A stretch of DNA of 64,000 nt, taken from the NCBI GenBank assembly GCA_002269645.1, contig NIVC01003304.1, positions 41,016-105,015 of the forward strand, read 5' to 3'. Shown here piece by piece: positions 15,446-64,000 of this stretch (the stretch's first letter is position 1; the number at the start of each line of letters is the position of its first letter). The notes under the pieces were generated by a model. That model searched no databases. It worked only from the letters and a program-made list of their open reading frames with translations, and was not told where the DNA came from. This DNA comes from Macrostomum lignano (lineage: Eukaryota). The translations under genes and the position numbers were made by a program.

Positions 15446-17183
15446 ATGGTCCGCGGACGCGGAGCTCTCAGAGGGCGCGGCGGAAGGGGTCGCGGTCGAG
15501 GTGGCGGTCGAGGCGGCGGTCGAGGCAGCAGTCGAGGCGGCAGTCGAGGCGGAGGCCGCCCGCAGCAGCCGGCCGCTGACGAGGAGTGGACGGCGGACAA
15601 GGCGGACCAGGCGCTCGACATTGCGGGCGACAGCAGCGCCTTTTTCCTCGGCGTGACCAGCTTCGAGCAGCACACGAGGGCGCAGACCAGCAATCGGAGT
15701 CGCTACGCGGCAGCCATCGCCGTGCTCACCAAATCCGGGGTCGAGATCAATCAGAACGCGCGAGTCCGTGCTCTCGCTGCCGCCTGGGCTCGCAACGACC
15801 CCGCGCTGGCTGACGGACTGCTCAAGCTCCGAGGCAGCTTCGGTGTAGCCGAGGTGCTCAAGGCGGCTACCATGCTGGACTCGGGACGAAAGATTCGAGA
15901 GTGGGAGAAGCGCCTCGCCAAGGCGCAGAGCCAGCCCGGAGGAGCAAAGAAGAAGTTCGTCAGCAAGGTCAAGTACAACATTGACAACCTGTCGGCCATT
16001 CGACCGGCTCAAGGCTCGGCTAGCGGAGCATTCTGCCGACACGTGAAGCGCTGGGTGCGCACCTTCTCCCTCGCCGAGCTCGACTCCGTGGAAGAAGCTT
16101 GCCGACATTTGCCACCTGAGCCCGTCGATTGACTTTCCTGCGGCGCCCTGGTTCCTGCCGTTCTGCTTCGGTGCCGAAGCTCCGGATGGGACGCTCGCCA
16201 AGCAGTGCTCCATCATCACCCCGGAGAATGTGAACGAGATCCTAGCCGAGCGAGCGCTGCCCTTTTCTGAAATTCGTCGCTTCCTTGAGCACATGAGCAA
16301 CCAAACGAAAGCTCGAGTTGTGCGCAACGACGACCGAGTGGATCGCGGCATCTGGTGGTACGAAGACGTCAAGTGTCCCGAGGTCGATGCGGCCATCGAG
16401 GAGCGACTGCGCAACGGAGAAAAGGTCACGCTCACCTACGGCAAGCTGATGGAACGTTTGCTGCTCTTCTCTGGCATGTCTCCCGTGCCCAGCTTCTACC
16501 CGATGCTCATCCCAGTCGCGGAGCACAAGCTGCAGGAGACCACTCTCAACCTCGAGTCTCCGGTCGTCGTCATTGGCGACGCCTCGTCTTCGATGAATGT
16601 CGCCATCCGCACCGCCACCATCATCTCGTCTCTGCTGTCGGCCATCATCAAGTGCGACCTGATCTTCTTCAACGTCAAGTCGTGGAGCCCCGAGGCCAAT
16701 CCTCGAACCATCGAAGAGGTCCTGAGTCTGGCTCGCAGCACAAAGGCATCAGGCTGCACTGCTCATGCCGCAGCTCTGTATCCGTACTACGAGCGCAAGG
16801 AGATTGTTCGCACTTTTATCGTAGTCACGGATGAGGAAGAGAACACCGACTTCCAGGGAACTCGTTTTTTTCCCCTGTTTGAGCGCTACCGACAAGAAGT
16901 GTTCGACGCGAAACTCGTGTTCGTGTCTTTCCTGCGTCAGCAGCACTCCAGGGGCCAGATGGTGTACAAGGCGGCCGAGCTGGGACTCAACGTGCAGCAG
17001 TTTGTGCTCAACGGAAGCCGGCCCGACCTCAACAAGCTCGACAGCATACTCGGTCGGCTAGGCGTCCAGTGCAGCACCTTCGAGGAGGAGGTGCAGAAGA
17101 TGACCGACCGGATCGGCACAGAGGGTCTTCGCGAGGTTTTCGACCAGCTGTTCGGCAGCGACTCCAGCTTTGACGAGCTTTGA
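15446..17183 (+). CDS. Intronless RGG-rich, helical plus C-terminal vWA (MIDAS) protein of Ro60/TROVE-like architecture; one frameshift near 16085
   Basis: ORF 15446-16132 joins the downstream frame (PWKKLADICHLSP..., open 16047-17183). MIDAS-type motifs GDASSSM, SGCT and FIVVTDEE parallel Ro60 DVSASM, GGTD and FIVFTDNE. N-terminal GRG/RGG tract. Confidence 0.65.
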
Positions 17184-17872: not shown

Positions 17873-19598
17873 TCAGTTCCCCGCGGCAGTGTGCCAGCTC
17901 TGAAAGCAAGGAGCTGCGCAAAGTCCAGGCTCTCCAGGGCAAGCATCACACACGTAGACAGTTCGCTTGGCCGAGCCGTTTCCATAGCAGACTCTGCACC
18001 GCTTAGTCGGTCTCATATTGGCCTCTGTCGGTGGTAGTTTGGATGGGGTATGCAGCGAGGCAGCTCGACGCTTCGATGTGTTCTGCCGCTTGCCCCGACC
18101 CGTCTGCTTCATCAGAAGGCGGATCGTAGCCTCCAAGAAGTCTAAGAACTTCATGCAGTTGCCAGAATGGCAGTAACAAATCCAAGCATTGCGCACCAAC
18201 TGAAGCAAAATATGAAACCCGAGCTTCTGGTGCCACCTGTGCGTCCTTCTTCCTGCACTGTAGGGTTGTAGCGCTGCGTCAAGGCGATCGACGCCTCCCA
18301 TACTCTTGTTGTACTGCAGCACTGAGTTGGGCTTCAAAACTGTCTCCACTACGCCGCCTCGAATTACTCGCCTCACTTCCGTGCTTCCAGCAACGCCGTG
18401 GGTGTCCAAAAGGTAGACAGTTTTGCGACCACTGGCCTTTCTGTCAACGAGCTTGACGGCAAGAACATCGCCTCGGCGCACGTGAGAGTGACTTATGGGT
18501 TGCAGTGCCAGCACCTTTAGCTCGTTGGGGATGCCTCGGTCGACTCTCACGGCTCCTGTCAGCATAGTATTACGTTCGAGCAGAAACTGAGCTAGGCGAA
18601 GCGACGTTAACCAGCTGTCACAATAGATCCTGCAGCCCAAGCCCAGCAAGTCCTTGCTTAGCTCGGCAACAATCTTTTCACTGAAAGATAAATTCCCGCA
18701 GTTCACTACTTCTCCAAACCTGTTGTTGTCCTGCTTGACAGCATGCACACGGAAGTTCCACAGAAATCCGGTGGAAGCCTCTGTGAGACAGTAGACCTTT
18801 ATGCCGAACCTGGCGCGCTTGTTGGGCATGAACTGTCGGAAAATGAGTCTGCCTTTGTACATGACCAACTCTTCATCTACTGAAACGTCCTGATTCGGGC
18901 CGTAGTTGGCTTGGCAAATACCACGCGCAATGTCTAAAAATGGCCTGATTTTCTTCAGGGAATCCTGGTGATTATTTACTGCGGTGCAGTCGTAGAATCG
19001 GAGGAATGACAAGAGCTAAATGAACCGATCCCTTCCGAGGCAATGCTCTTTTTGAAAATATTCACCACCGTAGAAATCGCTAGTCGACCAATACATGTGC
19101 AATTCGGGCTTCTTCACTAGACCCATGTACAGGACGATGGTGAGACATTTCCTCACTTCGTTGTCGGTGCATGGTGCATGGAAGAGGTTCAGCAGCCTCA
19201 ATTGCCATGTTTTGGAGCTCGAAATCAGCTCGAGCATTGGTCCAAAATCGAATGGCAGACACCAGATCAGAGGTAATAAAGTGCTGGAGGAAGAATTCGA
19301 TCCGAGACATTGTGTTATCCGACGCTTGGGCTAATACTGTAGATCCGGGTTCAGACCGGGCACTCTGAGGAATTCTGGCGCATCCCGGAGACGCGAGTCT
19401 TCACCCTCCTGAACAAAATTCCATTCATTTTCAATCAAACAAAGCTTCTTCTACCTGAGAGCCTTCCACGTCACTTTGGCCATCTTCTTCATCCACCTCG
19501 CCATCAATGCTTGCGTACTCGCTGGCGCTGTTATCACTGGTCAAAGCCGGTGAGTCGTCAAGAAAGGCAACGGCATCCTCATGAAAGTTGCTAGCCAT
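17873..19598 (-). mobile_element. Decayed piggyBac (PGBD-type) transposase
   Basis: DDD motifs VSVDEELV, IYCDSWLTS and MGGVDRLD. C-terminal Cys-rich domain CRVC...CDAC...LC..PCF..WH. Acidic N-terminus from ATG 19598. In-frame TAG at 19018-19016, a 7-bp duplication at 19168-19181 and further shifts near 19330 and 19430. TIRs and TTAA target site not identified. Confidence 0.9.
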
Positions 19599-22931: not shown

Positions 22932-23387
22932 TCACAGGAGGCGTCGCATCATAAAAGCCGCAATTGCCAAGCCGCTAATAACAGCACAGGAACCAGCAGA
23001 GCGGTGCCCAGCGCCAGGTGAATTAGCCGACTGTTCAACACTAGTGCCGAAGCACAACGGACCCTGGCAGACCTCCTCATTAGCCAGTTTCAGTACGGCA
23101 GCGTCCACACCGTATTTATTCTTAGCCACGCAGGTGTAATTGCCCAGGTGAGTGTCGCGCACATTCTTAATGCGCAGAGCGTAGAAGAATTCGTACACGT
23201 GAGTGCCGGCTGCACCTTGACTGCGCAGGCGCTCAACTGAGAAGGGGAACTGGTTCTTGATCACCTGGCTATCCGGCAGCGGCTGATCTGGCCTTGGAAT
23301 CACCGTGCCGCTGTAGAAAGTCACCTCCGGGTCGGGGTAGCCGGTTGAGACGCATTCCAGTGTGATCTCGTAGTTCCGCTCGGGGGC
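22932..23387 (-). CDS. Lachesin/IgLON-like protein, last exon (Ig3 + GPI-anchor signal)
   Basis: Acceptor cttcag|, phase 0. LEC...GYP, HLGNYTCVAKNKYG Ig motif. Hydrophobic C-terminus AVISGLAIAAFMMRRLL*. Confidence 0.85.
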   Translation of the reverse strand, partial: APERNYEITLECVSTGYPDPEVTFYSGTVIPRPDQPLPDSQVIKNQFPFSVERLRSQGAAGTHVYEFFYALRIKNVRDTHLGNYTCVAKNKYGVDAAVLKLANEEVCQGPLCFGTSVEQSANSPGAGHRSAGSCAVISGLAIAAFMMRRLL

Positions 23388-23477
23388 CTGAAGTGAGAGG
23401 GGGCGACCTTGGATTAGCACCAGGCATCAGGATCTCAAGTTGAATAGACGGCACGCTCATGGGATCCGAAGTAAAGA

Positions 23478-25845
23478 TGGTGACTCACTGGGGGTATGGG
23501 ATCGTGACTCACTGAGGGTATGGGATTGTGACTCACTGAGGGTATGGGATTGGTGATTCGCTGAGGGTATGGGATGGTGACTCGCTGAGGGTATGGGATT
23601 GGTGATTCGCTGAGGGTATGGGATGGTGACACGCTGAGGGTATGGGATTGGTGATTCGCTGAGGGTATGGGATGGTGACTCGCTGAGGGTATGGGATTGG
23701 TGATTCGCTGAGGGTATGGGATGGTGACACGCTGAGGGTATGGGATTGGTGATTCGCTGGTGGGTATGGGATGGTGACTCGCTGAGGGTATGGGATTGGT
23801 GATTCGCTGAGGGTATGGGATGGTGACACGCTGAGGGTATGGGATTGGTGATTCGCTGGTGGGTATGGGATGGTGACTCACTGAGGGTATGGGATGTTGA
23901 CTCACTGAGGGTATGGGATGGTGACTCACTGAGGGTATGGGGATGGTGACTCACTGAGGGTATGGAATGGTGACTCACTGAGGGTATGGGATGGGTGACT
24001 CACTGAGGATATGGGATTGGTGACTCACTGATGGTATGGGATGGGTGACTCACTGAGGGTATGGGATGGTGACTCGCTGAGGGTATGGGGATGGTGACTC
24101 ACTGAGGGTATGGGATGGGTGACTCACTGAGGGTATGGGATTGGTGACTCACTGAGGGTATGGGATGGGTGACTCACTGAGGGTATGGGATGGTGACTCA
24201 CTGAGGGTATGGGATGGTGACTCACTGAGGGTATGGGATGGGTGACTCACTGAGGGTATGGGATTGGTGACTCACTGAGGGTATGGGATTGGTGACTCAC
24301 TGAGGGTATGGGATGGGTGACTCACTGAGGGTATGGGATTGGTGACTCGCTGAGGGTATGGGATGGGTGACTCACTGAGGGTATGGGATGGGTGACTCAC
24401 TGAGGGTATGGGATGGTGACTCACTGAGGGTATGGGATGGTGACTCACTGAGGGTATGGGATTGGTGACTCGCTGAGGGTATGGGATGGGTGACTCACTG
24501 AGGGTTTGGGATGGTGACTCACTGAGGGTTTGGGATGGTGACTCACTGAGGGTATGGGGATGGGTGACTCGCTGAGGGTATGGGATGGGTGACTCACTGA
24601 GGGTATGGGATGGTGACTCGCTGAGGGTATGGGGATGGTGACTCACTGAGGGTATGGGATGGGTGACTCGTTGAGGGTATGGGATGGGTGACTCACTGAG
24701 GGTATGGGATGGTGACTCACTGAGGGTATGGGGATGGTGACTCACTGAGGGTATGGAATGGTGACTCACTGAGGGTATGGGATGGGTGACTCACTGAGGA
24801 TATGGGATTGGTGACTCACTGATGGTATGGGATGGGTGACTCACTGAGGGTATGGGATGGGTGACTCACTGATGGTATGGGATGGGTGACTCACTGAGGG
24901 TATGGGATGGGTGACTCACTGATGGTATGGGATGGGTGACTCACTGAGGGTATGGGATGGGTGACTCACTGATGGTATGGGATGGGTGACTCACTGAGGG
25001 TATGGGATGGTGACTCGCTGAGGGTATGGGGATGGTGACTCACTGATGGTATGGGATTGGTGACTCACTGATGGTATGGGATGGGTGACTCACTGAGGGT
25101 ATGGGATGGTGATTCGCTGAGGGTATGGGGATGGTGACTCACTGAGGGTATGGAATGGTGACTCGCTGAGGGTATGGGGATGGTGACTCACTGATGGTAT
25201 GGGATTGGTGACTCACTGATGGTATGGGATGGGTGACTCACTGAGGGTATGGAATGGTGACTCGCTGAGGGTATGGAATGGTGACTCACTGAGGGTATGG
25301 GGATGGTGACTCACTGAGGGTATGGAATGGTGACTCACTGAGGGTATGGGATGGGTGACTCACTGAGGATATGGGATTGGTGACTCACTGATGGTATGGG
25401 ATGGGTGACTCACTGAGGGTATGGGATGGGTGACTCACTGATGGTATGGGATGGGTGACTCACTGAGGGTATGGGATGGGTGACTCACTGATGGTATGGG
25501 ATGGGTGACTCACTGAGGGTATGGGATGGGTGACTCACTGATGGTATGGGATGGGTGACTCACTGAGGGTATGGGATGGTGACTCGCTGAGGGTATGGGG
25601 ATGGTGACTCACTGATGGTATGGGATTGGTGACTCACTGATGGTATGGGATGGGTGACTCACTGAGGGTATGGGATGGTGATTCGCTGAGGGTATGGGGA
25701 TGGTGACTCACTGAGGGTATGGAATGGTGACTCGCTGAGGGTATGGGGATGGTGACTCACTGATGGTATGGGATTGGTGACTCACTGATGGTATGGGATG
25801 GGTGACTCGCTGAGGGTATGGGGATGGTGACTCACTGAGGGTATG
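23478..25845 (+). repeat. 24-25-bp minisatellite GGTGACTCACTGAGGGTATGGGAT filling a lachesin-like intron
   Basis: About 95 units; internal duplication of about 570 bp (24781 vs 25350). Confidence 0.97.
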
Positions 25846-25878
25846 CCACCAGCGGCTGTAGTCAGAACCCGTGCTCAC

Positions 25879-26166
25879 CTGCAGATACAGATTGTGCAAT
25901 CGCGCGCCCCGGATGCTAGGCGCGTAGTTCACATCGATCCGGACGTCGTGTTTCGCCCCGTAGCCGACATTGTTGTTGGCGAAGCAGCGATAGACTCCCC
26001 GATCGTACTTGGTGACGTTGATGAGGGTCACTTCGCTCTGGTAGACCCGCTGCGGCTGGCCGGGGATGTTCAGCGGCAGCCCGTTGGCCCGGATCCAGCT
26101 GATGTGCGCCGGCGGCTCCGAGGTGGCGCTACACTTCAGCGTCACGTTGGCGCCCTCCTCCACCAC
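25879..26166 (-). CDS. Lachesin/IgLON-like protein, Ig2 exon
   Basis: Acceptor cgcag|, donor CAG|GTGAGC, phase 0-0. EGANVTLKCSA...W...DRGVYRCFANNNVG. Confidence 0.9.
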
Positions 26167-26254
26167 CTGCGAATGCGGGTATTGGGGAACAATGCCGGCT
26201 TATTGTATTAGTAATACGGCAATTCTGCACATTAATTATAATGTACGCAGACTG

Positions 26255-26335
26255 TTGTACACTGTACACACGCTCACACAGGGTGTACAGGCTGCACAGA
26301 CTTTCTAATCGTCAGCCCTCATGGCTTTGAATCAG
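26255..26335 (-). mobile_element. Short fragment of the SINE body in a lachesin-like intron
   Basis: cacacagggtgtacag...gactttctaatcgtcagccctcatggc. Confidence 0.45.
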
Positions 26336-26392
26336 AACATGATGGCCACTGGTCACTAATTAGAACAAGCTTCAACCGACACTGCAGCGCAC

Positions 26393-26835
26393 CTGATTGT
26401 TGGTGACCTCGGCCGGGTTAATAAACGGTTCCCTTGGCACGATCAGCGTGGCAACAACCTCGGGCGAGTCAGCTGGCGAGCCGGGCACATTAATCCGGCA
26501 TTTGTAATTGGCAGCGTCCAGGTTGGTGAGTCGGCGGATGAGCAGCGTGAAGGTGGTGACGTCAGTGTAGCCCATGTCCGGGATGAACACGGTTCGGCCA
26601 GGCCGGCTGCGGACTTCATATTTCAGCATGTCACCCTGCAGGATCGGGTTCTGCTCAGTGATCTTCGTGCCGGCGCTGATGGCCTTGTCGCTTTGGCCGG
26701 GCAAGAGTTTGTACCACTGCACTCGCTCGGGCGGGTTGCTGAACAGCGCCACGGAGCAGTTCAGGGTGGCCGTGCTGTCTATGGGCCGCACCTCTGTCAC
26801 TATGTTCTCAACGATTGCTGGCCGAATTGCAGAAA
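26393..26835 (-). CDS. Lachesin/IgLON-like protein, Ig1 (V-type) exon
   Basis: Acceptor cacag|, phase 1; donor CAG|GTGCGC. TATLNCSV...VQWYK...DAANYKCRI. Confidence 0.85.
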
Positions 26836-26879
26836 CTGTGCATAGTGGAGAGTGGTTGATGAAGCCAGTTAATTGAAAG

Positions 26880-27138
26880 GACCATTTAGCCATATTGTCC
26901 CACAACTGGCGAGAGGCATTACTGTCCATTCTAATGACTCCCCTGAACAGGCACACACTCACACAGGAGCATACAGCGGCCCTAACTTCATTTATCTTTA
27001 AGCATGTACACTTCACTGTGCCTTGGTGGTTGGCCCTCAAGGGTGTTAATTGCACAAGCAGAGCCAAGCCAAGATTTTAAGGCACACAAACTATGAGTAA
27101 TGTGACTGGACTGTAGCTAGACCACTTGGCTACACTCC
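26880..27138 (-). mobile_element. Second copy of the same SINE family (internally deleted head)
   Basis: About 200 bp align by eye with 29990-30200 (ggcgagaggcattact...gcatgtacacttcactg...agccaagcc). Head has GTAGCCAAGTGG A box. Confidence 0.65.
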
Positions 27139-31081: not shown

Positions 31082-31639
31082 ATGGACATTGCTACACAGC
31101 AGCAGCAGCAGCAACCGAGACTGTTTCAGCACACCCAGCCAGACACTGAAGCCTGGCTTGGCGCAGAGTGCCTGGGCTCTGGCCTGCTCCAGATCAATGA
31201 GAACTGTCTCACCTGGTCTGGGCCAGGCCGCCAGTTCGCATTGCCACACTCGGCCGTGTACGCTCACGCCCTGTCCAAAACTGGCTCCGGCGGCGCCTCC
31301 GGCCGGCCGCATCTCCTGCTGATGGCGCTGCTGGATGGCGCCGAGACGCCTGAAGAGATTCGCCTGTGCCCGCCGCAGTCTGACGGGGACAGCCTGCAGA
31401 TTCTGTTCAGTGCGATGTCCAACTGCCAGACTATTCTGGCTGCCGCAGACAATGCTAGCTACGATCGCGATTTCAATGGCCAGGAGTTTCGCTATGAAGC
31501 TGAGGCTGAGGAGGCTGAGAATGAAGATGATGATGACGAGGATGACGGGCCCGATTTTGATCACCTGCTGGTTGGTGACGCCGGTGACAGCAACGGCGAC
31601 CAGCCGATGGACACCGACCAGTTTGAAGATGCGCAGTGA
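31082..31639 (+). CDS. CLNS1A: Methylosome subunit pICln (ICln/CLNS1A family), intronless
   Basis: PH-like core LGSGLLQINENCLTW, AVYAHALS, EEIRLCP, ILFSAMSNCQ; acidic tract; C-terminal MDTDQFEDA. AATAAA at 31736. Confidence 0.85.
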   Translation: MDIATQQQQQQPRLFQHTQPDTEAWLGAECLGSGLLQINENCLTWSGPGRQFALPHSAVYAHALSKTGSGGASGRPHLLLMALLDGAETPEEIRLCPPQSDGDSLQILFSAMSNCQTILAAADNASYDRDFNGQEFRYEAEAEEAENEDDDDEDDGPDFDHLLVGDAGDSNGDQPMDTDQFEDAQ

Positions 31640-34530: not shown

Positions 34531-34735
34531 TTAAGCCGCGTAGTGATCAAACGAGGACAGGTACTCCAGCGCGGCGGTGTAGCAGAACTGGTACTGGTCC
34601 TCGGTCTGCACCATGGCTGGCCGCTGGGTGCGCAGGGTGCGCACAGTCTGGTACATGTCAACCACGCCTTCGTAGCGCATGCGCTCCAGCACCACGGCCA
34701 GGGTCAGGAAGACTCCGGTGCGGCCGACTCCGGCG
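34531..34735 (-). CDS. Lar: LAR-family RPTP terminal exon (end of PTP D2)
   Basis: [68 protein letters not shown], the typical LAR C-terminus. Acceptor cgcag|, phase 2. Confidence 0.95.
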
Positions 34736-36301: not shown

Positions 36302-37329
36302 CTGCAGTGAACGGTGATCGGCCCGTCCTGCCCAAACTGCTCTTTGGTTTTGTGCACCTGGCCGATAAACTCGATGAAGCCTTCGCCAGATTTCGGCACG
36401 CCCTGGTCGGGCCACTCGGTGAAGTGGAACTGGCGCACCGTTCTGGACTGGCCGTCCCTGGCGTCCGTGACCTTGAACTCGCGCAGGATGTAGCTGGGCA
36501 TGTTGTACTCTGCCATGGGGTCAACCACAAAGTACTGGTAGCGGGCCGAGCGCTCGCCAGGCCAATACTGGTGACATTTCTCCCGGCCCTGCTCGCGCAG
36601 TTTGGTGAGGTTTACCACAATGGTGGAGTTGTGCTCCCACAGCATGCGCCAGAAGTCCTCGGCGGTGTCCGGCAGCGGCCCCTGGGTGGCGATGTAGCAG
36701 GCCCGCTGCCTATAGCCGTCGATCCAGGAGGCGTTGATGTAGTCGGAGCCTTCGACGCCGCGTATCGGCTGCAGGTAGACACGGCAGTTCTCGTAGGGCA
36801 AAATGTTCACCAGGCGGTTCTTCAGCTTGTTGGCTGGCAGGCTGGCGCTGGTGAACTTGGCCGAGGCTGGCGGCTTCATCTGGGCCAGGCTGCGGAACTC
36901 CAGCTCCAGGCCGCTGACTCCGGACAGGTCATCCAGCAGGCTCAGCTTGTGCACGTGATTGGCCAGGGCTCGAGCCGGGACCTCCGTGTTGCCGCAGGTC
37001 ACCGCTTCCACCAGGCAGTCGTGAATGAAGATGTACTGGTCCTCAGTCTGCACCATGTAGTTCCGCTGCGCTCGCAGGCAGGTCACGTGACCGTAGACGT
37101 CCAGCGTCTTCTCCTGCTTCATCCGTTCGAGCATAGCATCGATGACGATGAAAGCGCCGGTGCGGCCGACGCCGGCGCTGCAGTGGACGACAATTGGCCC
37201 GGCGTCGGGCGGGTTGGAGGCGCGCACCCGGCGCAGGAACATGAGCAGCGGGGCGCAGTGTTCGGGCACGCCGTGGTCCGGCCAGGCCGTGAACTGGAAG
37301 TGTCGAATCTCGCGCTTCTCGGTGGCGCC
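36302..37329 (-). CDS. Lar: LAR-family RPTP exon: end of PTP D1 and most of D2
   Basis: [24 protein letters not shown] (D1); KNRL, DYINAS, WPDQGVP, VHC (D2). Canonical splice sites, intact frame. Confidence 0.95.
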
Positions 37330-39602: not shown

Positions 39603-40121
39603 AGCCCGCTGCAGTGCAAACGTCCTGATTGTGTAGTAAGCCAGTTCCAGCGTGTCGATAAGCGTCACTCCCATCATATCGTAGGTCTCCGTGCCCTTCA
39701 CTGGCCAGTACAAATCGCATTTCACTCTGGTCCGTTCCTCCAATTTCGTCATCATGACAATAGTGCAGCACTTCTGCTCCCAGGCCATGCGCCAGAAGTC
39801 CGCCACAGTGTCCGGAAGGGGGCCCTGGGTAGCAATGTAGGCATTCTGCTTGCGGTAGCCGTCCATGTAGTTCGCGTTGATGTAGTCGCTTCCGGGCAGG
39901 TTGTCCATGGGCTGCAGCACCACACGGGAGTGATCGTAGGCGATCACGTTGGCGTAACGGTTTTTAGCTTTGTTCACCTCCAGGTTGGAGTTCTCCAGGT
40001 GAACTGCTGGCCCGGGTCGATTGATTCGTATTCGGCCGAGAATTTCAAGTTGTCGTTGGCCTTCAGGTTGTTGACGTGGTCGATTAGCTGACCAATTGGC
40101 ACCGGCGGTGGTTCACCATGG
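39603..40121 (-). CDS. Lar: LAR-family RPTP exon: wedge and start of PTP D1; two 1-bp deletions
   Basis: HPPVP...[35 protein letters not shown]...SDYINAN. The 519-bp exon is 2 nt short of its phase requirement. Missing bases at about 40107 and 39995. Confidence 0.9.
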
Positions 40122-41718: not shown

Positions 41719-42017
41719 CCGGTGTCGGGAAGTTGACCCGACGCAGTTCCACAGGGTCAGTGGGGCCGGCATGATAAGCTGAGCTGTTGCCAGATCCAAT
41801 TGATGAAGTTGGCAGAGTGCCAGAGTGACCTGGCGGCATTGTCATGAACTGCTGACCCATCGCCATCGCTTGCATCTGTTGTTGCTGTTGCTGCTGTTGT
41901 TGCTGCTGCTGCTGAAGAAGCAACTGTTGCTGGTGTTGCAGAAGCTGCTGCTGCTGCTGTTGCTGTTGCTGTTGTTGAAGCAGAGACGCCGGTCCGTGGC
42001 CGCCGCCACCGCCGCCA

Positions 42018-42053
<36 letters not shown>

Positions 42054-42209
42054 CTGCTCTGCAGCGTGCCAGTGCAGAAGCTGGTCGAGTTGTTGTGCTG
42101 GGCGGCGATCAGAGGCTGCTTAAGGGCCGGCTCCACCATCACCTGGAGCGGCTGGCGCGAGTAGGACGAGTTGCCGTTCCTGAAGTTGCGCCCACGTTCG
42201 CCGCCCTTG
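41719..42209 (-). CDS. Lar: LAR-family RPTP juxtamembrane exon with poly-Gly and poly-Gln insert
   Basis: Phase 2-1, open. Ends PTDPVELRRVNFPTP, matching the LAR DPVEMRRLNYQTPG motif. Confidence 0.85.
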
Positions 42210-45675: not shown

Positions 45676-47024
45676 GGCGGGCAGACAAAGCAGCCAAGTG
45701 CAATGCAGCCGACTGCGATGCAGACAACGGCAGTCAGACCCAATGCGGAGATCACTAGAACAACAATCAACGTGTGGTAATTGTTCCCATCGTCTGTAGC
45801 TCGACTCGGCGTTGCCAAGGGAACATGGGTGCCGAACGCTAGCGACCACTCGCTATTAGTGCAGCCCTCGTGCCTGCCGCCTCCGTGCGCGTCGCTTAGA
45901 CAGGCTCGCAGTACAGCTTTATAAGCCTGGCCTTCCATCAGCGCTTTGTTAAATGCCACCTGCCCGACACCGTCCGGTCCCGGACAGTTCTCCGTTGTAT
46001 CTCCGTAGCCCAGGCTGAACTCGATGCTGGCCGCGCCGCCGCCGCCGCCGCCGCTGCCGCCGCTGGAGCCGACCAGTTGGGCAAATTTTTCAGCCGTGAA
46101 GCAGGCGGCAATGTAGGGCTCCTGCGAGCTTTTCACCAGAGGATTAGCGCTGGCAATCAGGTTGGCATGGTGCAGCAGATTAGTGCCAATCAGCTTGGAC
46201 TCCGGCGACACGATTAAGTAATAGCGGTCCACGCGGCCGCGGCGATCCGTGGCGCGGCTCAGCCGCAGCGTCACCACCCGCTTGCTGGCGTCCTTCGATA
46301 CGGCGACTGGCGGCTCCACTTTCTTCGGCGGCCGTGGCAGGGTGACGCAGATCACGCTTGTTGGAACTGCGATAGGCGCGGAGCTGGGGAAGGCGTACCG
46401 GGCGTAAACCGTTATGTTGTAGGTGGTGTCCGGCTCGAGGCCGTCGATGGTCAAATCGAAGGTGTTGCTGCCAATGTCCGGCAGCGGCACCTGACGCATG
46501 GAGTTCGGCTGCTTCCTAGTCAGCATAGCGCCTGTCTCGTCTTGATAATTAGCGAAGCCCAATGCCGCGTACTGGAAGCTCTCCAGGTTGGCCGGCGTCT
46601 CGGGCTTTGACCAGGTGATGTACAGAGACTCGGGGCGCCGGTCCATGCAGCGCAGCTGGCGCGGCGCCATCTGGCGCCATTTTGCGGGTCCCTGGCGCGG
46701 CGCGGCGTCTCCATTGTACAGCTGCACCACGTAGTCGCTGGTGAGGGGTCCCAGCGTTCCGTCGAGGCCCACCGACTGCAGGCGGACAATGTACTCTGAA
46801 TTAGAAAAGAGGTCGGTGATCATATATCCGCTGTCGGTAGGCGATGGAACCGTGTGCTCGGTGAAGTGCCGGTCCTCTCGCATAGTTGACGGAGCGGTGT
46901 GCACGCGAACTTCACGGATTTTACCGGCTGGCAAGCGCCAGTTGATGCGGATGACGGTGGGCGAGACTCGCTCGATGTGGTCCACAATGGGCGGCTCGGG
47001 CCCCCGGCCCTGGGTCATTTCCAC
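45676..47024 (-). CDS. Lar: LAR-family RPTP exon: two FN3 repeats, membrane-proximal region and transmembrane helix
   Basis: Intact 1349-bp frame with FN3 W and Y motifs (DGLEPDTTYNITVYA). TM TLIVVLVISALGLTAVVCIAVGCIALGCFV. Donor |GTAAGT. Confidence 0.9.
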
Positions 47025-47401: not shown

Positions 47402-47685
47402 CCGAAGCCGACTGCTCCAGGGTCCCGCGCCGGCAGAATTGTAGGCCCGGCAGCGGAAGAGGTACGTGCCCTTGGGGTTCAGGTCCTGCACCAGGATGCT
47501 CTCAGTTGAGGAGGTCCGGTTCACCGATCGCTTCGTTTCGTGCTCAGAATTCTGCTCCCAGTAGTGAATTTCGAAGGTGTGGATCACGCCGTTTCTTAAT
47601 AGCGGATTCGGCGGCTTCAGAGCAACGCTGACTGATGTGTCGGACATGTGCGTCACTCCGAAGTCTTCGGGGAAACCGAGCGGAA
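47402..47685 (-). CDS. Lar: LAR-family RPTP FN3 exon
   Basis: VPLGFPEDF...QDLNPKGTYLFRCRAYNSAGAGPWS; phase 1-0. Confidence 0.9.
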
Positions 47686-48135: not shown

Positions 48136-48989
48136 TGAACAATCTGAGAATTTTGGGGCCCTAAAAACTCTTATTATTTATTTCGAAAAATTATTTCTTA
48201 TACTACTACTACTCTTAGATACAGATATATATCTATAGTACTTGATTGACTACAGAGAAATGACTTTAATAAATTAATAAAAAAGCTATATATTCCTAGA
48301 AAACTCCCACGAGCCGTCAGTCTGCAACAGATTGATTTGCAGCCCATTCGGCTCCTGTCAGCGGGTGGGAAAAAATCCAATATATCCGCCAGACCGATCT
48401 CCCTCCCCGTCGCCCCGGTGATTTCAATTAATTCCTTCTAGAAGCAGCGAGTCCTCGACTAGCAGAGATTCATCCGGCAATGATGGGGTCGAAAGCAGCA
48501 GATGACTCACGGCCCCGCCTCACTGTGCTGCCCAGCATTTATTCCTCAGCTGCTCCTCCCTTCTTCACCTACTTGTGCCGCTGCTGCCGCTGTTTCCGCA
48601 ATTTCCACCCCAGTCTTCTTCACCGCTGCTCTGCGGAACTGCGGCGGCCCTATCCCGGGGCTAAGCCTCTCTCTTAGCCATCTTGAGGAATTCCCCTTGC
48701 CCCCGAGTTGAGCTCAAATTGAGAGAGAGAGAGACCTTCATATATATATATATATATTGTTGAGAAGCGACTGATGAGGCATCTTGCTCTGCGGATTCTG
48801 CAGCTTAGTTGAAGAGTGAGAGAGCCAGAAAAGAAGAAGAAGAGGACGGATGGCGATGCTATTTTTCAGCCACTCGTCTCTGGCGAAGAAATTTCCCACA
48901 GCAAAGGGAGACAACCTGACGGTTTGTTTAAAACGGGGCAAACTCGGACAACGCAGCCACTCACCAGCTTCCCCCCCCCCAACACAATT

Positions 48990-49586
48990 CGGACACTCAC
49001 CGACAACCCGGACACTTACCGACAACCCGGACACTCACCGACAACTCGGACACTCACCGACAACCCGGACACTCACAGAAAATCCGGACACTCACCGACA
49101 ACCCGGACACTCACCGACAACCCGGAAACTTACCGACAATCCAGACACTCACCGACAACCCGGACACTCACCGACAACCCGGACACTCACCGACAACCGG
49201 ACACTCACCGACAATCCGGACACTCACCGACAACCCGGACACTCACCGACAACCCGGACACTCACCGACAACCGGACACTCACCGACAACCCGGACACTC
49301 ACCGACATCTCCACTCAGCACAACCCGGACACTCACCGACAACCCAGACACTCACCGACAACCCGGACACTCACCGACAACCCGGACACTCACCGACAAC
49401 CCGGACACTCACCGACAACCCGGACAATCACCGACAATCCGGACACTCACCGACAACCCGGACACTCACCGACAACTCGGACACTCACCGAAAATCCGGA
49501 CACTCACCGACAACCCGGACACTCACCGACAACCCGGACACTCACTCATCAGCTTCCCCACCGAGCACAACTCGGACACTCACCGG
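48990..49586 (+). repeat. 19-bp minisatellite CCCGGACACTCACCGACAA abutting a LAR splice donor
   Basis: About 30 units; core identical to the donor sequence. Confidence 0.93.
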
Positions 49587-49913
49587 CCTCCTCAGTCTTA
49601 ACCATGATGGTAGTCTTGGGCCCGTAGCCCTCGTTGTTCTTGGCGGCAAGGCTGATGTTGTAGGTGACACCAGGCTTGAGCTCGCTCTGCAGCCGTTTGC
49701 CCGAGCTGTCCCGGCTGATGAACAGCACTTCCTTCTTGATCAGCTGTGCCAGCTCGGGCGGCTCGATGACAGAGACGGTCAGCTGGTACTCTTCAATCCG
49801 AGGACTATTGATGGTGTCTGGCGGTTTCCAGGACAAATCCACCACTGGCATGGTCGAGTGGCCGAGCTCGATGCTGGACACGATGGCTCGAAGATCTCTG
49901 GGCGCCGAGGGCA
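49584..49913 (-). CDS. Lar: LAR-family RPTP FN3 exon
   Basis: VPSAPRDL...LSWKPP...LKPGVTYNISLAAKNNEGYGP...KTEEA; phase 1-1. Confidence 0.9.
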
Positions 49914-51061
49914 CTGCAGTGCAGGTGTCGGGGTCGGAGCAGTCATTAGCAAACGAGGGGCCATAGAGAAGCGAGGGCTGCTGCGGTCTGGGCTGCCAAG
50001 CCACATAGCAGGGCGGCACCAGCAGAAGCAGCAATATTGGTGGCAGCAGCATGAGAATGTGGCCAGGGCTGGCTAGCAAAGGTTTCAAACTAAATTGCGG
50101 AAGCAGCGGATCTATCCCTAAGAGGCTGAGAGTCGAACTACCGAATCTCTGCGTCAAATAGGTGAGGCAAACGAGGAGGCTGGCTGCACAAGCGAGCCCG
50201 GCTTTTGGTTGGTCACCCGAAGCAGGGCAGGGGATTGGGGAGATAGGGAGACCGCTGAATCGGTTTGGGGAATTGATGCTAGCTAGCTAGGGAAGAGAGG
50301 AGCACGGAAGGGTAGGAATGGAAGGCTAGGATAGGAAATGGGGATGGCGTAGGCCACCCATCTCCCTCTCCCCTGTAGAAAATGCAGCTGCATGCACTAC
50401 GAAGCCAGCAAAATGTATTAAATATTAGGAGACAGAATTCATGACTGCTCAGAAAGCCCCTAAACAACTCACACACATCGCGTGGGAAGGGCTACGCACG
50501 GATATGGGACTATGCAGGTAGGGGGAAGCGTAGGATAAGGAACGTAGGGCCAGGGCGCAAGGCGAGAGACATCACCATATCTCCCCCTCCCCAGCCACCA
50601 GTGTTGTAAGCCCGCCTGGAAATGCACTTACTCCCACGAGACTCAGACACTATGCATGCGGTGCCCCGGCAAGTGTCATTCATAATTCAGGTGATGTGGA
50701 AGTGGGCGGACGGTCCGCTGCCGACATGGCTGGTGGCGGCGAGGTACACAAGATTTACACCCGCCTTTGCTGGGCGGCTCTGTGAGCTTTTATGAGTGAA
50801 AAAATATTCATTTCAAATGCAAACTTTTTTTATGCCCGGTGAAATTAGCAAATTAAATTGGCTATATTCGATTGGAATCCCTATGGGGACGATTTGAATA
50901 ACCCCCCCCGAGCTGAACGACAGCAAAATGTATATCAAGAATTGAATAGTAGAATAGGTTGACCATGCTGACCTGGGTGCGGGAATTCATCTGTATTCCA
51001 TGAATAGGATCTTTTTATTGTTACTGTGAAGGCGATGGCTTCTTGGTGATGAAACTGGCAC

Positions 51062-51122
51062 TGTGATGGTGATGGTGATGATGATGGTGATGGTGATGAT
51101 GATGGTGATGATGATGATGATA

Positions 51123-51175
<53 letters not shown>

Positions 51176-51230
51176 AGTGATGATGATGATGTTGATGGTG
51201 ATGATGATGGTGATGATTATAATTGTGATA

Positions 51231-51307
<77 letters not shown>

Positions 51308-51341
51308 GGTGATGATTATAATTGTGATAATGATGATGATG

Positions 51342-51391
<50 letters not shown>

Positions 51392-51452
51392 GATGATGGT
51401 GATGATGATGATGGTGATGATTATAATTGTGACAATGATGATGATGATGATA

Positions 51453-51502
<50 letters not shown>

Positions 51503-51524
51503 GGTGATGATTATAATTGTGATA

Positions 51525-51577
<53 letters not shown>

Positions 51578-51614
51578 GATGATGATGATGATGGTGATGA
51601 TTATAATTGTGATA

Positions 51615-51691
<77 letters not shown>

Positions 51692-51743
51692 GGTGATGAT
51701 GATGATGGTGATGATTATAATTGTGATAATGATGATGATGATT

Positions 51744-51775
<32 letters not shown>

Positions 51776-51875
51776 AGTGATGATGATGATGGTGATGTGA
51801 TGATGGTGATGGTGATGATAATGAGATGGTGATGACGATGGTGATGATGATGGTGCTGGATGGTGATGATGATGC
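51062..51875 (+). repeat. (GAT/GGT)n trinucleotide microsatellite with embedded (ATT)n and recurring GATTATAATTGTGATAAT spacers
   Basis: About 800 bp. Confidence 0.97.
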
Positions 51876-58739: not shown

Positions 58740-59051
58740 CCTGTCCCAGTGTAGCCACAGGCGCAGGAATAGTAGCGTAGGGCCCAGTGTGAGCTCCGCT
58801 AGAAGCTGCCACCGCACAATGTACAGAGTCTTGGGCTCCAGGCCGCGGATGGTGTACGCGATAGCGGCGCTGGTTGGCCGCTTCGTTATTCACATCGATG
58901 TGCTTCCCAGTGCTGGGCGAATCCGAAGCTTTATAATAGGACACGCGCCACTGTTGTATGGCGCTCTTCTGCAGCTTGGGCGGCGACCATTCCACCACAA
59001 TGTCCTGCCCGTTCACCACAGTGGCTTTGATGTCTTCGGGCGCGTCCGGGT
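58740..59051 (-). CDS. Lar: LAR-family RPTP FN3 exon with compensating frameshifts
   Basis: DPDAPEDIKA...VEWSPP. The conserved YTIRGLEPKTLYIVR lies in a shifted frame over about 58815-58875. Phase 1-1. Confidence 0.8.
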
Positions 59052-60499: not shown

Positions 60500-60824
60500 C
60501 TGTCTCCTCAGTCTGGAACCAGGCGGCGCGGTGAACACGCCAGCCCCGCGGAGGTGTTAGCCGCAATAGACACGGAATAGTTGGTGAAGGGCCACAGCCC
60601 GGTCAAGTTGCGACAGGTAGCGTTGGCGTCAATACCGAGGCTGCCGCCGCCGCCGCCGCCGTCACCGCCGCCATCAGCGCCCGGACGCTGGATCGGCCGC
60701 CACCGCAGGGTGAAACCGGCAAGGCGGCCGTTCCAGGCGGCCCGAGGCGGCGGCCGCCAGCAGAAGCGGAGTGAGGCGGCGGTGCGCGACGCCAGCGCCA
60801 AATCCAAGGGCGCGGCGCTTGGCG
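60500..60824 (-). CDS. Lar: LAR-family RPTP FN3 exon, 2 nt short
   Basis: PSAAPLDL...FCWRPPP...NGRLAGFTLRW...TGLWPFTNYSVSIAANTSAG. Terminal QTEET|G is in a shifted frame. Confidence 0.8.
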
Positions 60825-61064
60825 CTGAGTTCAGTTTATTAAGTTTTTCGTATTGCAGTTTATAACACATATTTACGAGCAGTTGCAGGTTAATGCGAAA
60901 TGGGATTTCAGGATTGGATGCAGTGAGTAGGGGTGAAGGAATTCCTTTGTTACATGGGAAAAGCTACAAAAATGAGAGAAAAACGCGCATTGTGCAGGTT
61001 GCAAAAATAGGATGATTGAACGCTTGCGCGGCAGCTATAGCTGCACTTCTTACTCATAACAGGT

Positions 61065-62656: not shown

Positions 62657-62962
62657 TGAACTCCATAGTCTTGCAGACGACAGTATCCGTTGACATGCCC
62701 GACTGCCTTGGACATTAATTGGCGTCAGCTGCATATGATAACTGTGCTCGCCTCAGATTTCTGAGCATATAGCCGTCTCCGGTTTGGCCTCTATAGAAAT
62801 TTCCGCCTCCTCCCGTTGGTGTCATCGTAGCTGGCCGAGGACTTGTAGGACAGCACGTAGCTGGCCACCCGCCGCTGTCCTGGTCCAGCAGCGGGTCCCA
62901 GTACACCTGAATCGTGTTCGCGTCCATCGACAAGCATTGGAATCCTTTGGGCTGCGAGGCCA
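62657..62962 (-). CDS. Lar: LAR-family RPTP FN3 exon with about six 1-bp deletions; gene continues beyond the window
   Basis: VASQPKGFQC...IQVYWDP, RVASYVLSYK, GYMLRNLR, YHMQLTPINVQG and VVCKTMEF are found in successive frames. Acceptor ccgcag|, donor A|GTGAGT. Confidence 0.7.
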
Positions 62963-64000
62963 CTGCGGAGCGCAAAGGGAGGAGACGAATTTCCGGTGTT
63001 AAAAAAGTTCTGTTCGGTTTGGCCAATACAAGCTACTGACAATAGAGTAGTATGAGTGACAAGTGTACGTACGCAAAGTCTGTAAAGAATAGCTAAACAT
63101 CTCCTATCATCGTCCTTTGTTTTTGGGTCATTTTGATGTCAAGTTGCGCTTGCAAAATAGAATATTATTAATAAACAGTTTTTCATAGCGCGCGCAAAAA
63201 AAGTAATTGATTACGCGCAGTATGCTACTGACGCATGCCGACGCCAGTAATAGAATGGTACGCGAGCGCGCGCTATTTTTTTAATTATCAGGGCGATGAG
63301 AAGAGTTGCGATTGAATTTTAACGTACCTGTCTGCCGTACGATTGCTAATAGCTCAAAAATCATAATTAATACACAAAAATCTAAGCTCCGAGTAAGACT
63401 AAAATCGACATTTATTCTAGAAAAAAAACATTAGTTATTACAGATTCTCAAAATGTTAATCTAATAAAACAAATGTTAGTAATTGAATCTGAATTTATTA
63501 GTAGAGAAAAAGAACAGATAAACAAATTCTAACAACAATCGTTGCGTTTTTTCTGCTAATAAAATTAATCTAAGCTAAATAGACAATAGAGACTCAGATA
63601 ATTGCTATATAGTTATTTGATTTATTCTAGAATGAGAGAAAAGAAAAAATCTAATTTGCTAAGGCCACAACACACATCTAAATTATGCCGAGGTGCATCA
63701 ATAAATATAACAAAATTGAGTTTTGGTGCAGTACTAAGAGAGTAACAGGTGGGTAAGGTTAAATACATATTTCCCAGTCAGCGGGAAATCAGGCTCTCAC
63801 CGTGCTGGTCTAGCGGGTTTGGCAAGAAGGAATTTTTAAAAAATAATATTTGACGATGCTCGTTATATAAAAAATTTAAACGCGCGCAAACAGCCGGTGT
63901 TTTTACAGGTATGCGGGTTCAGAGGGTTCAGCTGCTTGCTTGTGTAAAGGAATTTGATGATGAAGAATAAAAGGAATATCGTAGTTGCTATGTGCGCGGC

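What the first reader, a model, noticed from the sequence alone, without database searches (positions are those of the whole stretch)
49584..50052. Intronic signal peptide fused in frame to a mid-ectodomain FN3 exon: candidate short LAR isoform from an internal promoter
Seen: the frame of FN3 exon 49913-49584 stays open upstream through the acceptor to ATG 50052. It reads MLLPPILLLLLVPPCYVA-WQPRPQQ...CSDPDTCTAVPSAPRDL, a signal-peptide-like leader with a plausible VA-W cleavage. Inference: a transcript starting here would encode a receptor with only the last four FN3 repeats, TM and D1/D2, lacking all Ig domains. Established: C. elegans LAR (ptp-3) makes a long PTP-3A and an internally initiated, Ig-less PTP-3B with distinct functions. 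An equivalent in another phylum would be conserved or convergent isoform logic.
Basis: partly seen in the sequence, partly recalled or inferred. Interest (0 to 1): 0.75.

Follow-up and report, generated by a model that had tools for sequence, protein, structure and literature searches.

The report
Possible short LAR phosphatase isoform start
Just upstream of a mid-gene exon of a flatworm LAR-type receptor phosphatase gene there is an in-frame start codon with a signal-peptide-like leader that could make a shortened receptor, as known in worms and rat, but no transcript evidence could be obtained and chance is almost as likely.

Summary
On the minus strand, ATG 50052 opens a frame that runs through the acceptor (AG 49915-49914) into FN3 exon 49913-49584 and reads exactly as quoted.

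The window is the last 64 kb of Macrostomum lignano contig NIVC01003304.1. The gene is a LAR-type receptor phosphatase: FN3 exons, TM, D1/D2 77-80% identical to LAR/PTPsigma. This exon is the fourth FN3 from the membrane.

For a real alternative first exon:
- An in-frame ATG with so hydrophobic a leader is rare (0.06-0.7% per exon).
- The 139 nt have exon-like GC (0.61) and coding-like codon usage.
- 309 nt upstream are ATG-free.
- The leader lies in the longest identical run between the two genome copies.

Against:
- The annotated product of the second copy, and the product reconstructed for this one, use the long-form splice.
- Tyr sits at -3, the n-region has no charge and the start context is weak.
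- The leader spans a working acceptor matching the species' SL trans-splice motif, which could remove it.

No transcript data or distant relatives were reachable. I put a real Ig-less isoform at about 0.4 and chance at about 0.4. Intron-initiated truncated LAR forms are already known in C. elegans and rat, so this would be a new member of a known kind.

The parts
50053..50286 (-). Candidate 5' UTR. In-frame open stretch upstream of the ATG, free of ATG, C/T-rich. It begins right after a pyrimidine tract plus TAG (50308-50287).
   Evidence: Open for 78 codons before the ATG. The nearest upstream ATG is at 50361. Codon usage is intron-like, LLR -18.7. A 1-nt A-run difference to the second copy at 50206 breaks this upstream frame there.
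49999..50052 (-). ATG 50052 plus signal-peptide-like leader MLLPPILLLLLVPPCYVA. n-region = Met only, h-region LLPPILLLLLV, c-region PPCYVA.
   Evidence: The 10-residue Kyte-Doolittle mean of 2.83 is the highest of 150 ORF starts. Start context is CTCATGC.
49914..49998 (-). Linker WQPRPQQPSLLYGPSFANDCSDPDTCTA(V). It has two Cys five residues apart and ends at the AG acceptor 49915-49914 (CTGCAG|TG).
   Evidence: Leader plus linker have codon LLR +12.65 and GC 0.61.
49584..49913 (-). FN3 exon, phase 1-1. It is the fourth FN3 from the membrane: FN5 of 8 in PAA53983.1, or 6 of 9 if exon 60870-60500 is counted.
   Evidence: Pfam fn3. Identical peptide in PAA53983.1 residues 478-587. One synonymous difference to the second copy.
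48990..49545 (-). 19-nt minisatellite of 29.6 copies just downstream of the exon's donor (about 38 nt into the intron). Every unit carries a GGTGAGT donor-like motif.
58740..59051 (-). Preceding FN3 exon. Its phase-1 donor CAGG|GTGAGT is spliced to 49913 in the long isoform. The 8.8-kb intron between them is the largest between the exons mapped in the window.
62657..62962 (-). Upstream FN3 exon. In this contig it carries six 1-nt homopolymer deletions relative to the second copy.
60500..60870 (-). Further FN3-like exon (5' end not defined). It is an intact ORF in the second copy but is skipped in PAA53983.1.
47402..47685 (-). Next FN3 exon.
45676..47024 (-). Exon with two FN3 repeats, the membrane-proximal region and the TM segment.
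41719..42209 (-). Juxtamembrane exon with poly-Gly and poly-Gln tracts and the DPVELRRVNFPTPG motif.
39603..40121 (-). First D1 exon. It has two 1-nt homopolymer deletions in this contig (40106, 39994), which create the premature stop at 40084.
36302..37329 (-). Exon with the D1 C-terminal part and the D2 N-terminal part.
34531..34735 (-). Last D2 exon, with stop TAA at 34533-34531.

Best explanation
Exon 49913-49584 is a constitutive internal FN3 exon of a Macrostomum lignano LAR-type receptor tyrosine phosphatase gene (shown).

By a narrow margin, the most likely reading of the in-frame upstream ORF is that it is also used as an alternative first exon of the 'exon extension' kind. All the steps below are inferred.
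1. Some RNAs begin in the roughly 230-300 nt, ATG-free, conserved stretch at about 50290-50053. They would start there either at an intronic start site or by SL addition at an upstream AG.
2. These RNAs run unspliced through the acceptor at 49914.
3. They are translated from ATG 50052.
4. The hydrophobic leader MLLPPILLLLLVPPCYVA directs the chain into the ER.
5. The product is a type I receptor of about 1448 aa: a short Cys-containing linker, the last four FN3 repeats, TM, juxtamembrane region and D1/D2. It has no Ig domains and none of the first FN3 repeats.

This would be the flatworm counterpart of C. elegans PTP-3B.
For: - The gene is LAR-type, and four FN3 repeats, TM and D1/D2 lie downstream.
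- With the two assembly indels repaired from the second copy, ATG 50052 heads one uninterrupted 1448-aa ORF ending at TAA 34531.
- An in-frame ATG plus so strong a hydrophobic start is rare: 0.06-0.08% of local dinucleotide shuffles at the observed score and 0.7% at a lenient threshold. Over all AG sites and frames in real sequence it is 0.08% and 0.36%. It ranks first among 150 ORF starts.
- The exon frame has no stop in 124 codons, against 6 stops in each other frame (P=0.007 in shuffles).
- Codon-usage LLR of the 46 leader codons is +12.65. That is the 12th percentile of real coding chunks, but only 1-3% of open intron chunks reach it, GC-matched ones included. The 78 codons before the ATG score -18.7, so the change falls at the ATG.
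- GC of the 140 nt before this acceptor is 0.61, which is exon level. It is 0.34-0.55 before the eight other acceptors.
- There is no ATG for 309 nt upstream (P about 0.01-0.07).
- The longest identical run between the two genomic copies in the whole 28-kb alignment is 49781-50205, covering the leader and 153 nt before it. Sequence further upstream differs by 1.3-3.5%.
- The preceding intron is the largest between the exons mapped in the window (8.8 kb).
- Precedent exists for intron-initiated Ig-less LAR forms at the equivalent place in C. elegans (PMC4418752) and rat (PMC2674045).
Against: - There is no transcript evidence of any kind.
- The GenBank protein of the second copy (PAA53983.1) is long-form and splices the previous FN3 exon to 49913.
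- The 947-aa product recorded for this copy reconstructs exactly as a long-form model starting at Met 62696. This reconstruction could not be confirmed by look-up.
- No separate short-form gene is listed in the second locus. However, only the longest product per gene is recorded.
- The signal peptide is imperfect. The n-region has no positive charge, Tyr sits at -3 of the proposed VA|W site, and Pro rules out the alternative site after Cys15 (reading against the von Heijne -3/-1 rule).
- The start context CTCATGC has a pyrimidine at -3.
- The Leu run comes from a CTG-rich tract.
- M. lignano trans-splices about 30% of its genes, with acceptor motif YTNCAG (PMC8629364). The FN3 acceptor CTGCAG matches that motif and has no cis donor upstream in such an RNA. 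The leader could therefore be removed as an outron. The SL's own AUG would then be out of frame.
- Identity between the two copies is weak evidence. Five purely intronic identical runs of 300-390 nt exist elsewhere in the locus.
Confidence: 0.42

Rival explanations
1. Fortuitous ORF. The stretch upstream of the acceptor is ordinary intron that happens to be C/T- and GC-rich. That makes it poor in stops and ATGs and rich in Leu and Pro codons. A CTG-rich tract preceded by ATG happens to fall in the exon's frame. Only the long isoform exists, and the local sequence identity between copies reflects splicing signals or a gene-conversion tract.
For: - An open frame reaching an ATG at least 20 codons upstream occurs in 12-16% of shuffles.
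- The finding was picked by eye from many exons and windows, so rare coincidences are expected.
- The codon score is below typical coding: 12th percentile for LLR and 5th percentile for the in-frame versus off-frame difference.
- Tyr at -3, an uncharged n-region and a weak start context.
- The annotated product of the second copy, and the product reconstructed for this one, are long-form.
- Other introns also contain 300-390-nt identical runs.
- GC, stop, ATG and codon signals are correlated and count roughly as one signal.
Against: - The joint event of an in-frame ATG with a leader this hydrophobic is 0.06-0.7% per exon even after conditioning on local composition.
- The switch from intron-like to coding-like codon usage falls at the ATG.
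- This is the only one of nine acceptors with exon-level GC upstream.
- The leader sits in the longest identical run of the locus.
Confidence: 0.4
2. There is a 5'-truncated LAR RNA, but it lacks the leader. Transcripts initiating in the 8.8-kb intron, or the long pre-mRNA itself, are SL trans-spliced at the FN3 acceptor 49914. The leader is discarded as outron. The mRNA starts SL|TGCCCTCG..., and any protein would start at an internal Met (Met68 of the quoted peptide) without a signal peptide, as proposed for the rat liver LAR isoform.
For: - The acceptor CTGCAG fits the M. lignano trans-acceptor motif YTNCAG.
- An unpaired acceptor near a 5' end is sufficient for trans-splicing in nematodes (PMC8629364).
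- The rat intron-11 isoform has no signal peptide (PMC2674045).
Against: - The SL's terminal AUG is out of frame at this junction. It would open a short ORF that overlaps the exon and ends at the TGA at 49781-49779 (reading).
- A type I ectodomain without a signal peptide is unlikely to be made properly.
- This reading does not explain the leader's unusual properties.
Confidence: 0.1
3. Alternative 3' splice site of the long isoform. The donor of exon 59051-58740 (phase 1) joins an upstream AG at 50284-50283, after the strong pyrimidine tract. This inserts about 123 residues, hydrophobic stretch included, between two FN3 repeats.
For: - The frame is open exactly from the TAG at 50289-50287.
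- The AG at 50284/50283 is preceded by 85-90% pyrimidines and is phase-compatible.
Against: - The 78 codons before the ATG have intron-like codon usage.
- The second copy has a 1-nt difference at 50206 that breaks this frame.
- TAG acceptors are weak.
- A Leu-rich hydrophobic insert inside an ectodomain is implausible.
- The insert is absent from PAA53983.1.
Confidence: 0.04

Closest known systems
C. elegans PTP-3B and PTP-3C (LAR orthologue ptp-3; Ackley et al. 2005, as summarised in PMC4418752 and PMC7281833)
   Same: A LAR-type gene makes, besides the Ig+FN3 long form, shorter receptors from independent internal promoters. These lack the Ig domains and the first FN3 repeats but keep TM and D1/D2. 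PTP-3B keeps 5 FN3 repeats; the candidate here would keep 4.
   Different: PTP-3B is experimentally established, with transcripts, reporters and isoform-specific genetics. Here only an ORF is seen. Here the putative first exon is an upstream extension of the FN3 exon that contains a working acceptor. That is awkward in an organism with SL trans-splicing.
Rat liver-specific truncated LAR transcript from an intron-11 promoter (Welham et al. 2009, PMC2674045)
   Same: An intronic start in the mid-ectodomain FN3 region of a LAR gene, giving an Ig-less product that retains the last FN3 repeats, TM and both PTP domains.
   Different: The rat 5' exon is a separate 165-bp non-coding exon spliced to exon 12. 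Translation is proposed from an internal Met, and SignalP found no signal peptide. The flatworm candidate would carry its own ATG and a signal-like leader contiguous with the exon.
Vertebrate LAR/PTPsigma/PTPdelta short ectodomain forms produced by alternative splicing of FN4-FN7 (own knowledge; Pulido et al. 1995 is cited in PMC4418752)
   Same: Ectodomain shortening within the FN3 array of the same receptor family.
   Different: Those forms keep the normal N-terminus, signal peptide and Ig domains, and arise by exon skipping rather than a new 5' end.
Eukaryotic cleavable signal peptides (von Heijne n-h-c model; own knowledge)
   Same: N-terminal Met followed by an 11-residue Leu-rich hydrophobic core, helix-breaking Pro-Pro, and Ala at -1.
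   Different: No basic residue in the n-region. Tyr at -3 violates the -3/-1 rule, so cleavage at VA|W is doubtful.

Membership tests
LAR-type (type IIa) receptor protein tyrosine phosphatase | Tandem cytoplasmic PTP domains D1-D2 most similar to LAR/PTPsigma/PTPdelta | tested here: met
   The 323-aa D1/D2 ORF hits PTPsigma and LAR structures at E about 1e-237 to 1e-232, well ahead of PTPalpha at 1e-151. It is 77-80% identical to LAR-family proteins. The exons were mapped by tblastn.
LAR-type (type IIa) receptor protein tyrosine phosphatase | Ectodomain of 8-9 FN3 repeats preceded by Ig domains | tested here: inconclusive
   FN3 is met: Pfam finds 8 fn3 stretches in PAA53983.1, and the window exons match fn3. 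Ig is seen only as a partial third Ig-like segment (ANITCIAVGSPMPVVRW...ENYTCVADNNLG), read by eye in the second copy. Pfam reported no Ig family for that segment. Ig1-2 lie beyond both contig ends.
LAR-type (type IIa) receptor protein tyrosine phosphatase | Single TM followed by the juxtamembrane motif DPVE(L/M)RR.NF.TPG and the D1 wedge region | tested here: met
   Read directly from the translation...PTDPVELRRVNFPTPG... and ...[49 protein letters not shown].
Internally initiated Ig-less LAR isoform (PTP-3B kind) | Own initiator ATG and signal sequence in frame with a mid-ectodomain FN3 exon | tested here: met
   Met at sequence level only. SignalP was not run.
Internally initiated Ig-less LAR isoform (PTP-3B kind) | Independent transcription start or promoter inside the gene | not testable with these tools
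   No CAGE, RACE or RNA-seq data are reachable. Indirect hints only: a 309-nt ATG-free stretch and the largest mapped intron upstream.
Internally initiated Ig-less LAR isoform (PTP-3B kind) | Mature transcripts that lack the upstream Ig/FN3 exons | not testable with these tools
   The only products on record are long-form. Exact-ORF look-ups found no other contigs.
Internally initiated Ig-less LAR isoform (PTP-3B kind) | Conservation of the leader in relatives | tested here: inconclusive
   The leader is 100% identical in the second M. lignano copy and lies in the longest identical run of the locus. The copies are too close for this to be decisive, and other introns show similar runs. No other species was reachable.
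Eukaryotic cleavable signal peptide | Hydrophobic h-region of 7-15 residues near the N-terminus, not long enough for a TM helix | tested here: met
   LLPPILLLLLV. The 10-residue hydropathy mean is 2.83, followed by a polar stretch.
Eukaryotic cleavable signal peptide | Positively charged n-region | tested here: not met
   The n-region is Met alone. This feature is common but not obligatory in eukaryotes.
Eukaryotic cleavable signal peptide | Small neutral residues at -1 and -3 of the cleavage site | tested here: not met
   For VA|W, -1 is Ala (acceptable) but -3 is Tyr. The site after Cys15 has Pro at -3.
SL trans-spliced 5' end in M. lignano | Acceptor matching YTNCAG with no cis donor upstream, and SL-bearing reads | tested here: inconclusive
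   The FN3 acceptor CTGCAG matches the motif fully. Upstream AGs (50255, 50184) match only TNCAG. SL reads are not available. There is no SL RNA gene in the window.

The most novel reading that the evidence does not exclude
A flatworm LAR gene makes an Ig-less receptor from an intronic first exon that carries its own signal peptide, placed before the last four FN3 repeats. That is the same place in the ectodomain as the internal starts of C. elegans ptp-3b and the rat liver LAR transcript. If so, a dual-start 'long synaptic / short adhesive' LAR architecture would be ancestral to bilaterians or repeatedly reinvented. It would also be maintained in a trans-splicing genome even though a functional acceptor lies inside the first exon.
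Probability: 0.3. Interest if true: 0.55.

Novelty: new member of a known kind. Interest (0 to 1): 0.38.

Why it matters
LAR-family phosphatases organise synapses and axon guidance through their Ig domains. Ig-less forms in C. elegans have separate adhesive and morphogenetic roles.

A third, lophotrochozoan example at the same place in the gene would suggest that the two-start design is old. It would also provide a regenerating, transgenic-capable model (M. lignano) in which to test what an Ig-less LAR does.

If real, it would also be a useful case of how a first exon containing a working acceptor escapes SL trans-splicing. If it is chance, it shows how easily GC-rich, CTG-rich intron ends mimic signal peptides.

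Tried and rejected
1. 'The upstream Ig/FN3 exons are decaying, so ATG 50052 is the true start.' I saw frame breaks in exons 62962-62657, 60870-60500 and 59051-58740. I rejected the idea because all of them, and two more in the first D1 exon, are indels of one or two bases against the second copy, nearly all of them 1-nt homopolymer deletions. The second copy is intact at each of these sites (and has its own single-base deletions elsewhere). The window end is the contig end, where consensus quality is low.

2. 'The recorded 947-aa product is a 5'-partial ORF starting at 50265, i.e. transcript support for the leader.' The arithmetic fits. So does a long-form model starting at Met 62696. The second model matches the annotators' habit of starting at the first Met (PAA53983.1). 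Under the leader model the product would be 876 aa. Neither sequence could be confirmed.

3. A single upstream coding exon that would give 947 aa: no convincing candidate.

4. Protein word-index searches with the leader+FN3 peptide and the 450-aa ectodomain exon found nothing. The index apparently holds no proteins above about 570 aa.

5. The exhaustive search found only PAA53983.1 as a close relative. No hit aligned to leader residues 1-33.

6. Exact-ORF look-ups of the unspliced leader ORF with ATG or TTG start: not on record.

7. Rfam found no RNA family in the window. There is no SL RNA gene. The leader region is not a dispersed repeat.

8. Pfam on single frames could not resolve the frameshifts.

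9. Literature search for the gene id found nothing. Ackley et al. 2005 is not held.
Full report
**What is at the coordinates.** On the minus strand, ATG 50052 opens a frame that reads MLLPPILLLLLVPPCYVAWQPRPQQPSLLYGPSFANDCSDPDTCTA. It runs through the acceptor ...CACTGCAG|TG (AG 49915-49914) into a 330-nt phase-1/phase-1 exon (49913-49584). The exon ends at GCCG|GTGAGT and matches Pfam fn3. It runs 124 codons upstream of the acceptor, back to a TAG at 50289-50287, and the two other frames each have six stops there.

**Source and gene.**
- An intronless ICln-like ORF in the window (31082-31639) is on record on one contig only: Macrostomum lignano assembly GCA_002269645.1, NIVC01003304.1.
- The coordinates show that window position 64000 is the end of that contig.
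- The minus-strand gene has FN3 exons, a TM exon, a poly-Gly/poly-Gln juxtamembrane exon and tandem PTP domains.
- The PTP domains hit PTPsigma and LAR at E about 1e-237 and are 77-80% identical to LAR-family proteins.
- I mapped the exons as 62962-62657, 60870-60500, 59051-58740, 49913-49584, 47685-47402, 47024-45676, 42209-41719, 40121-39603, 37329-36302 and 34735-34531.

**A second copy of the locus.**
- The exhaustive protein search returned one close relative: PAA53983.1 (BOX15_Mlig000129g4, 932 aa) from contig NIVC01002990.1.
- Its locus (L003) is colinear with the window. Exons are 96-100% identical (97.9% or more apart from the repeat-rich juxtamembrane exon). Unique intron differs by about 1-3.5%.
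- PAA53983.1 is a long form: part of an Ig-like domain, then eight FN3 repeats. It reads ...PAPVATLGQ|VPSAPRDL across the junction. The acceptor at 49914 is therefore a real cis-splice site, and the exon is the fourth FN3 from the membrane.

**Assembly errors, and an idea I dropped.**
- Several window exons looked frameshifted. I briefly considered that the N-terminal half of the gene was decaying, which would have made ATG 50052 the true start.
- The comparison with L003 shows otherwise. All twelve breaks are small indels against the second copy, nearly all of them single-base homopolymer deletions. There are six in 62962-62657, two each in 60870-60500 and 59051-58740, and two in the first D1 exon.
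- L003 has its own such deletion elsewhere. These are consensus errors near a contig end.
- They explain why the gene recorded for this contig is only 947 aa and stops at 40084.
- That length is reproduced exactly by a long-form model starting at Met 62696. By coincidence it is also reproduced by an ORF running from 50265.
The annotators start at the first Met, as in PAA53983.1, and a leader-based model would give 876 aa. I could not confirm either sequence.

**Is the leader more than chance?**
- Reaching an in-frame ATG is unremarkable (12-16% of shuffles).
- An in-frame ATG followed by so hydrophobic a start is rare. It occurs in 0.06-0.08% of dinucleotide shuffles of the local sequence at the observed score and 0.7% at a lenient threshold.
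- Over about 33,000 AG-by-frame combinations in real sequence the figures are 0.08% and 0.36%.
- It is the best of 150 non-repetitive ORF starts in the window.
- Codon usage of the 46 codons scores +12.65 bits. That is low for coding (12th percentile), but only 1-3% of open intron chunks reach it. The 78 codons before the ATG score -18.7.
- The 140 nt before this acceptor have GC 0.61, like exons. The other eight acceptors have 0.34-0.55.
- No ATG occurs for 309 nt upstream.
- The longest identical run between the two copies in the whole alignment is 49781-50205. It covers the leader and the 153 nt before it.
- These signals are partly correlated through base composition. Long identical intronic runs also occur elsewhere.

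**What speaks against a real isoform.**
- No transcript evidence could be reached. The annotated product of the second copy, and the product reconstructed for this one, are long-form. No separate short gene is listed in the second locus.
- The signal peptide is imperfect: no charged n-region, Tyr at -3 of VA|W, and Pro blocking the alternative site.
- The start context is CTCATGC.
- M. lignano adds a 35-nt spliced leader ending in AUG to about 30% of its genes, at acceptors with motif YTNCAG. An unpaired acceptor near a 5' end suffices for trans-splicing in nematodes (PMC8629364).
- The FN3 acceptor CTGCAG matches that motif. An RNA starting in the intron could therefore be trans-spliced there and lose the leader. 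The SL's AUG would be out of frame at that junction.

**Comparison with what is known.**
- C. elegans ptp-3 makes three transcripts from independent promoters, and PTP-3B has five FN3 repeats and no Ig domains (PMC4418752; PMC7281833).
- Rat LAR has a 5'RACE-proven liver transcript from an intron-11 promoter. It would keep part of FN6, FN7-8, TM and both PTP domains, and it has no signal peptide (PMC2674045).
- The isoform logic is therefore already known in two phyla. A flatworm case would be a new member of that kind. Its distinguishing features would be an own signal-like leader contiguous with the FN3 exon.

**Verdict.**
- The central inference, an expressed Ig-less isoform, remains unproven.
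- Weighing the rarity of the pattern, its exon-like properties, the selection effect, the imperfect signal peptide and the trans-splicing problem, I estimate:
  - about 0.42 for a real alternative first exon;
  - about 0.40 for a fortuitous ORF;
  - about 0.10 for a truncated but leaderless RNA;
  - about 0.04 for an alternative 3' splice site.
- Browser tracks, 5'RACE or a comparison with M. cliftonense and M. hystrix would settle it quickly.

Noticed in passing
window 62962-58740 and 40121-39603 (minus strand): Twelve small indels against the second genomic copy, nearly all 1-nt homopolymer deletions, break the LAR reading frame in this contig. The window end is the contig end. As a result the recorded gene product stops at 40084, and both PTP domains (39603-34531) are unannotated.
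   Followed up: yes
window 60870-60500 (minus strand); L003 16407-16776: An extra FN3-like exon. It is an intact ORF in the second copy but is skipped in PAA53983.1. I could not find an acceptor whose phase matches the preceding donor. It may be a cassette exon with an undetected 5' boundary, or a relic.
   Followed up: partly
window 48990-49545: A 19-nt minisatellite of 29.6 copies starts about 38 nt after the FN3 exon's donor. Each unit contains GGTGAGT, so the intron starts with about 30 tandem donor-like sites. On the plus strand it creates a spurious 408-aa ORF (48850-50076) that also runs antisense through the exon and leader.
   Followed up: partly
window 42209-41719 (minus strand): The juxtamembrane exon encodes an 18-residue poly-Gly run and long poly-Gln tracts in frame. 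The Gly run differs by 15 nt between the two copies. The title of a rat LAR paper (PMC2120354) mentions isoforms with extensive CAG repeats; I did not read that paper.
   Followed up: no
window 50254-50248 (minus strand): The AG at 50256-50255 is followed by CGGTCTC, the first 7 nt of the M. lignano spliced leader. It is probably coincidence, but it could mislead mapping of SL-containing reads.
   Followed up: no
window 50590-50300 (minus strand): By eye, two imperfect copies of a roughly 75-nt G-rich then C/T-rich motif (GGGGAG..GGAGAT..CCTACG..TCCTATCCTA..) lie upstream of the conserved block. Origin unknown.
   Followed up: no
window 51064-51874: A trinucleotide microsatellite of about 270 copies gives a 346-aa poly-Ile/Thr ORF on the minus strand and a poly-Met/Val ORF on the plus strand.
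   Followed up: partly
window 31082-31639 (+): An intronless 185-aa gene of the ICln/Voldacs family (Pfam PF03517), annotated in GenBank. It was used to identify the source contig.
   Followed up: yes
window 22932-27067 (minus strand): A separate Ig-superfamily gene (415-aa annotated product; Ig_3/I-set exons) lies downstream of the LAR gene. It is not the Ig part of LAR.
   Followed up: partly
window 17873-19012 (minus strand): A 379-aa ORF with piggyBac-type transposase domains (DDE_Tnp_1_7, E 1.5e-41, plus zf-Tnp_2).
   Followed up: partly
window 15446-17183 (+): Two long plus-strand ORFs (228 and 317 aa, the first starting with an RGG-rich stretch) with no Pfam match. Possibly exons of an unannotated gene.
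   Followed up: no
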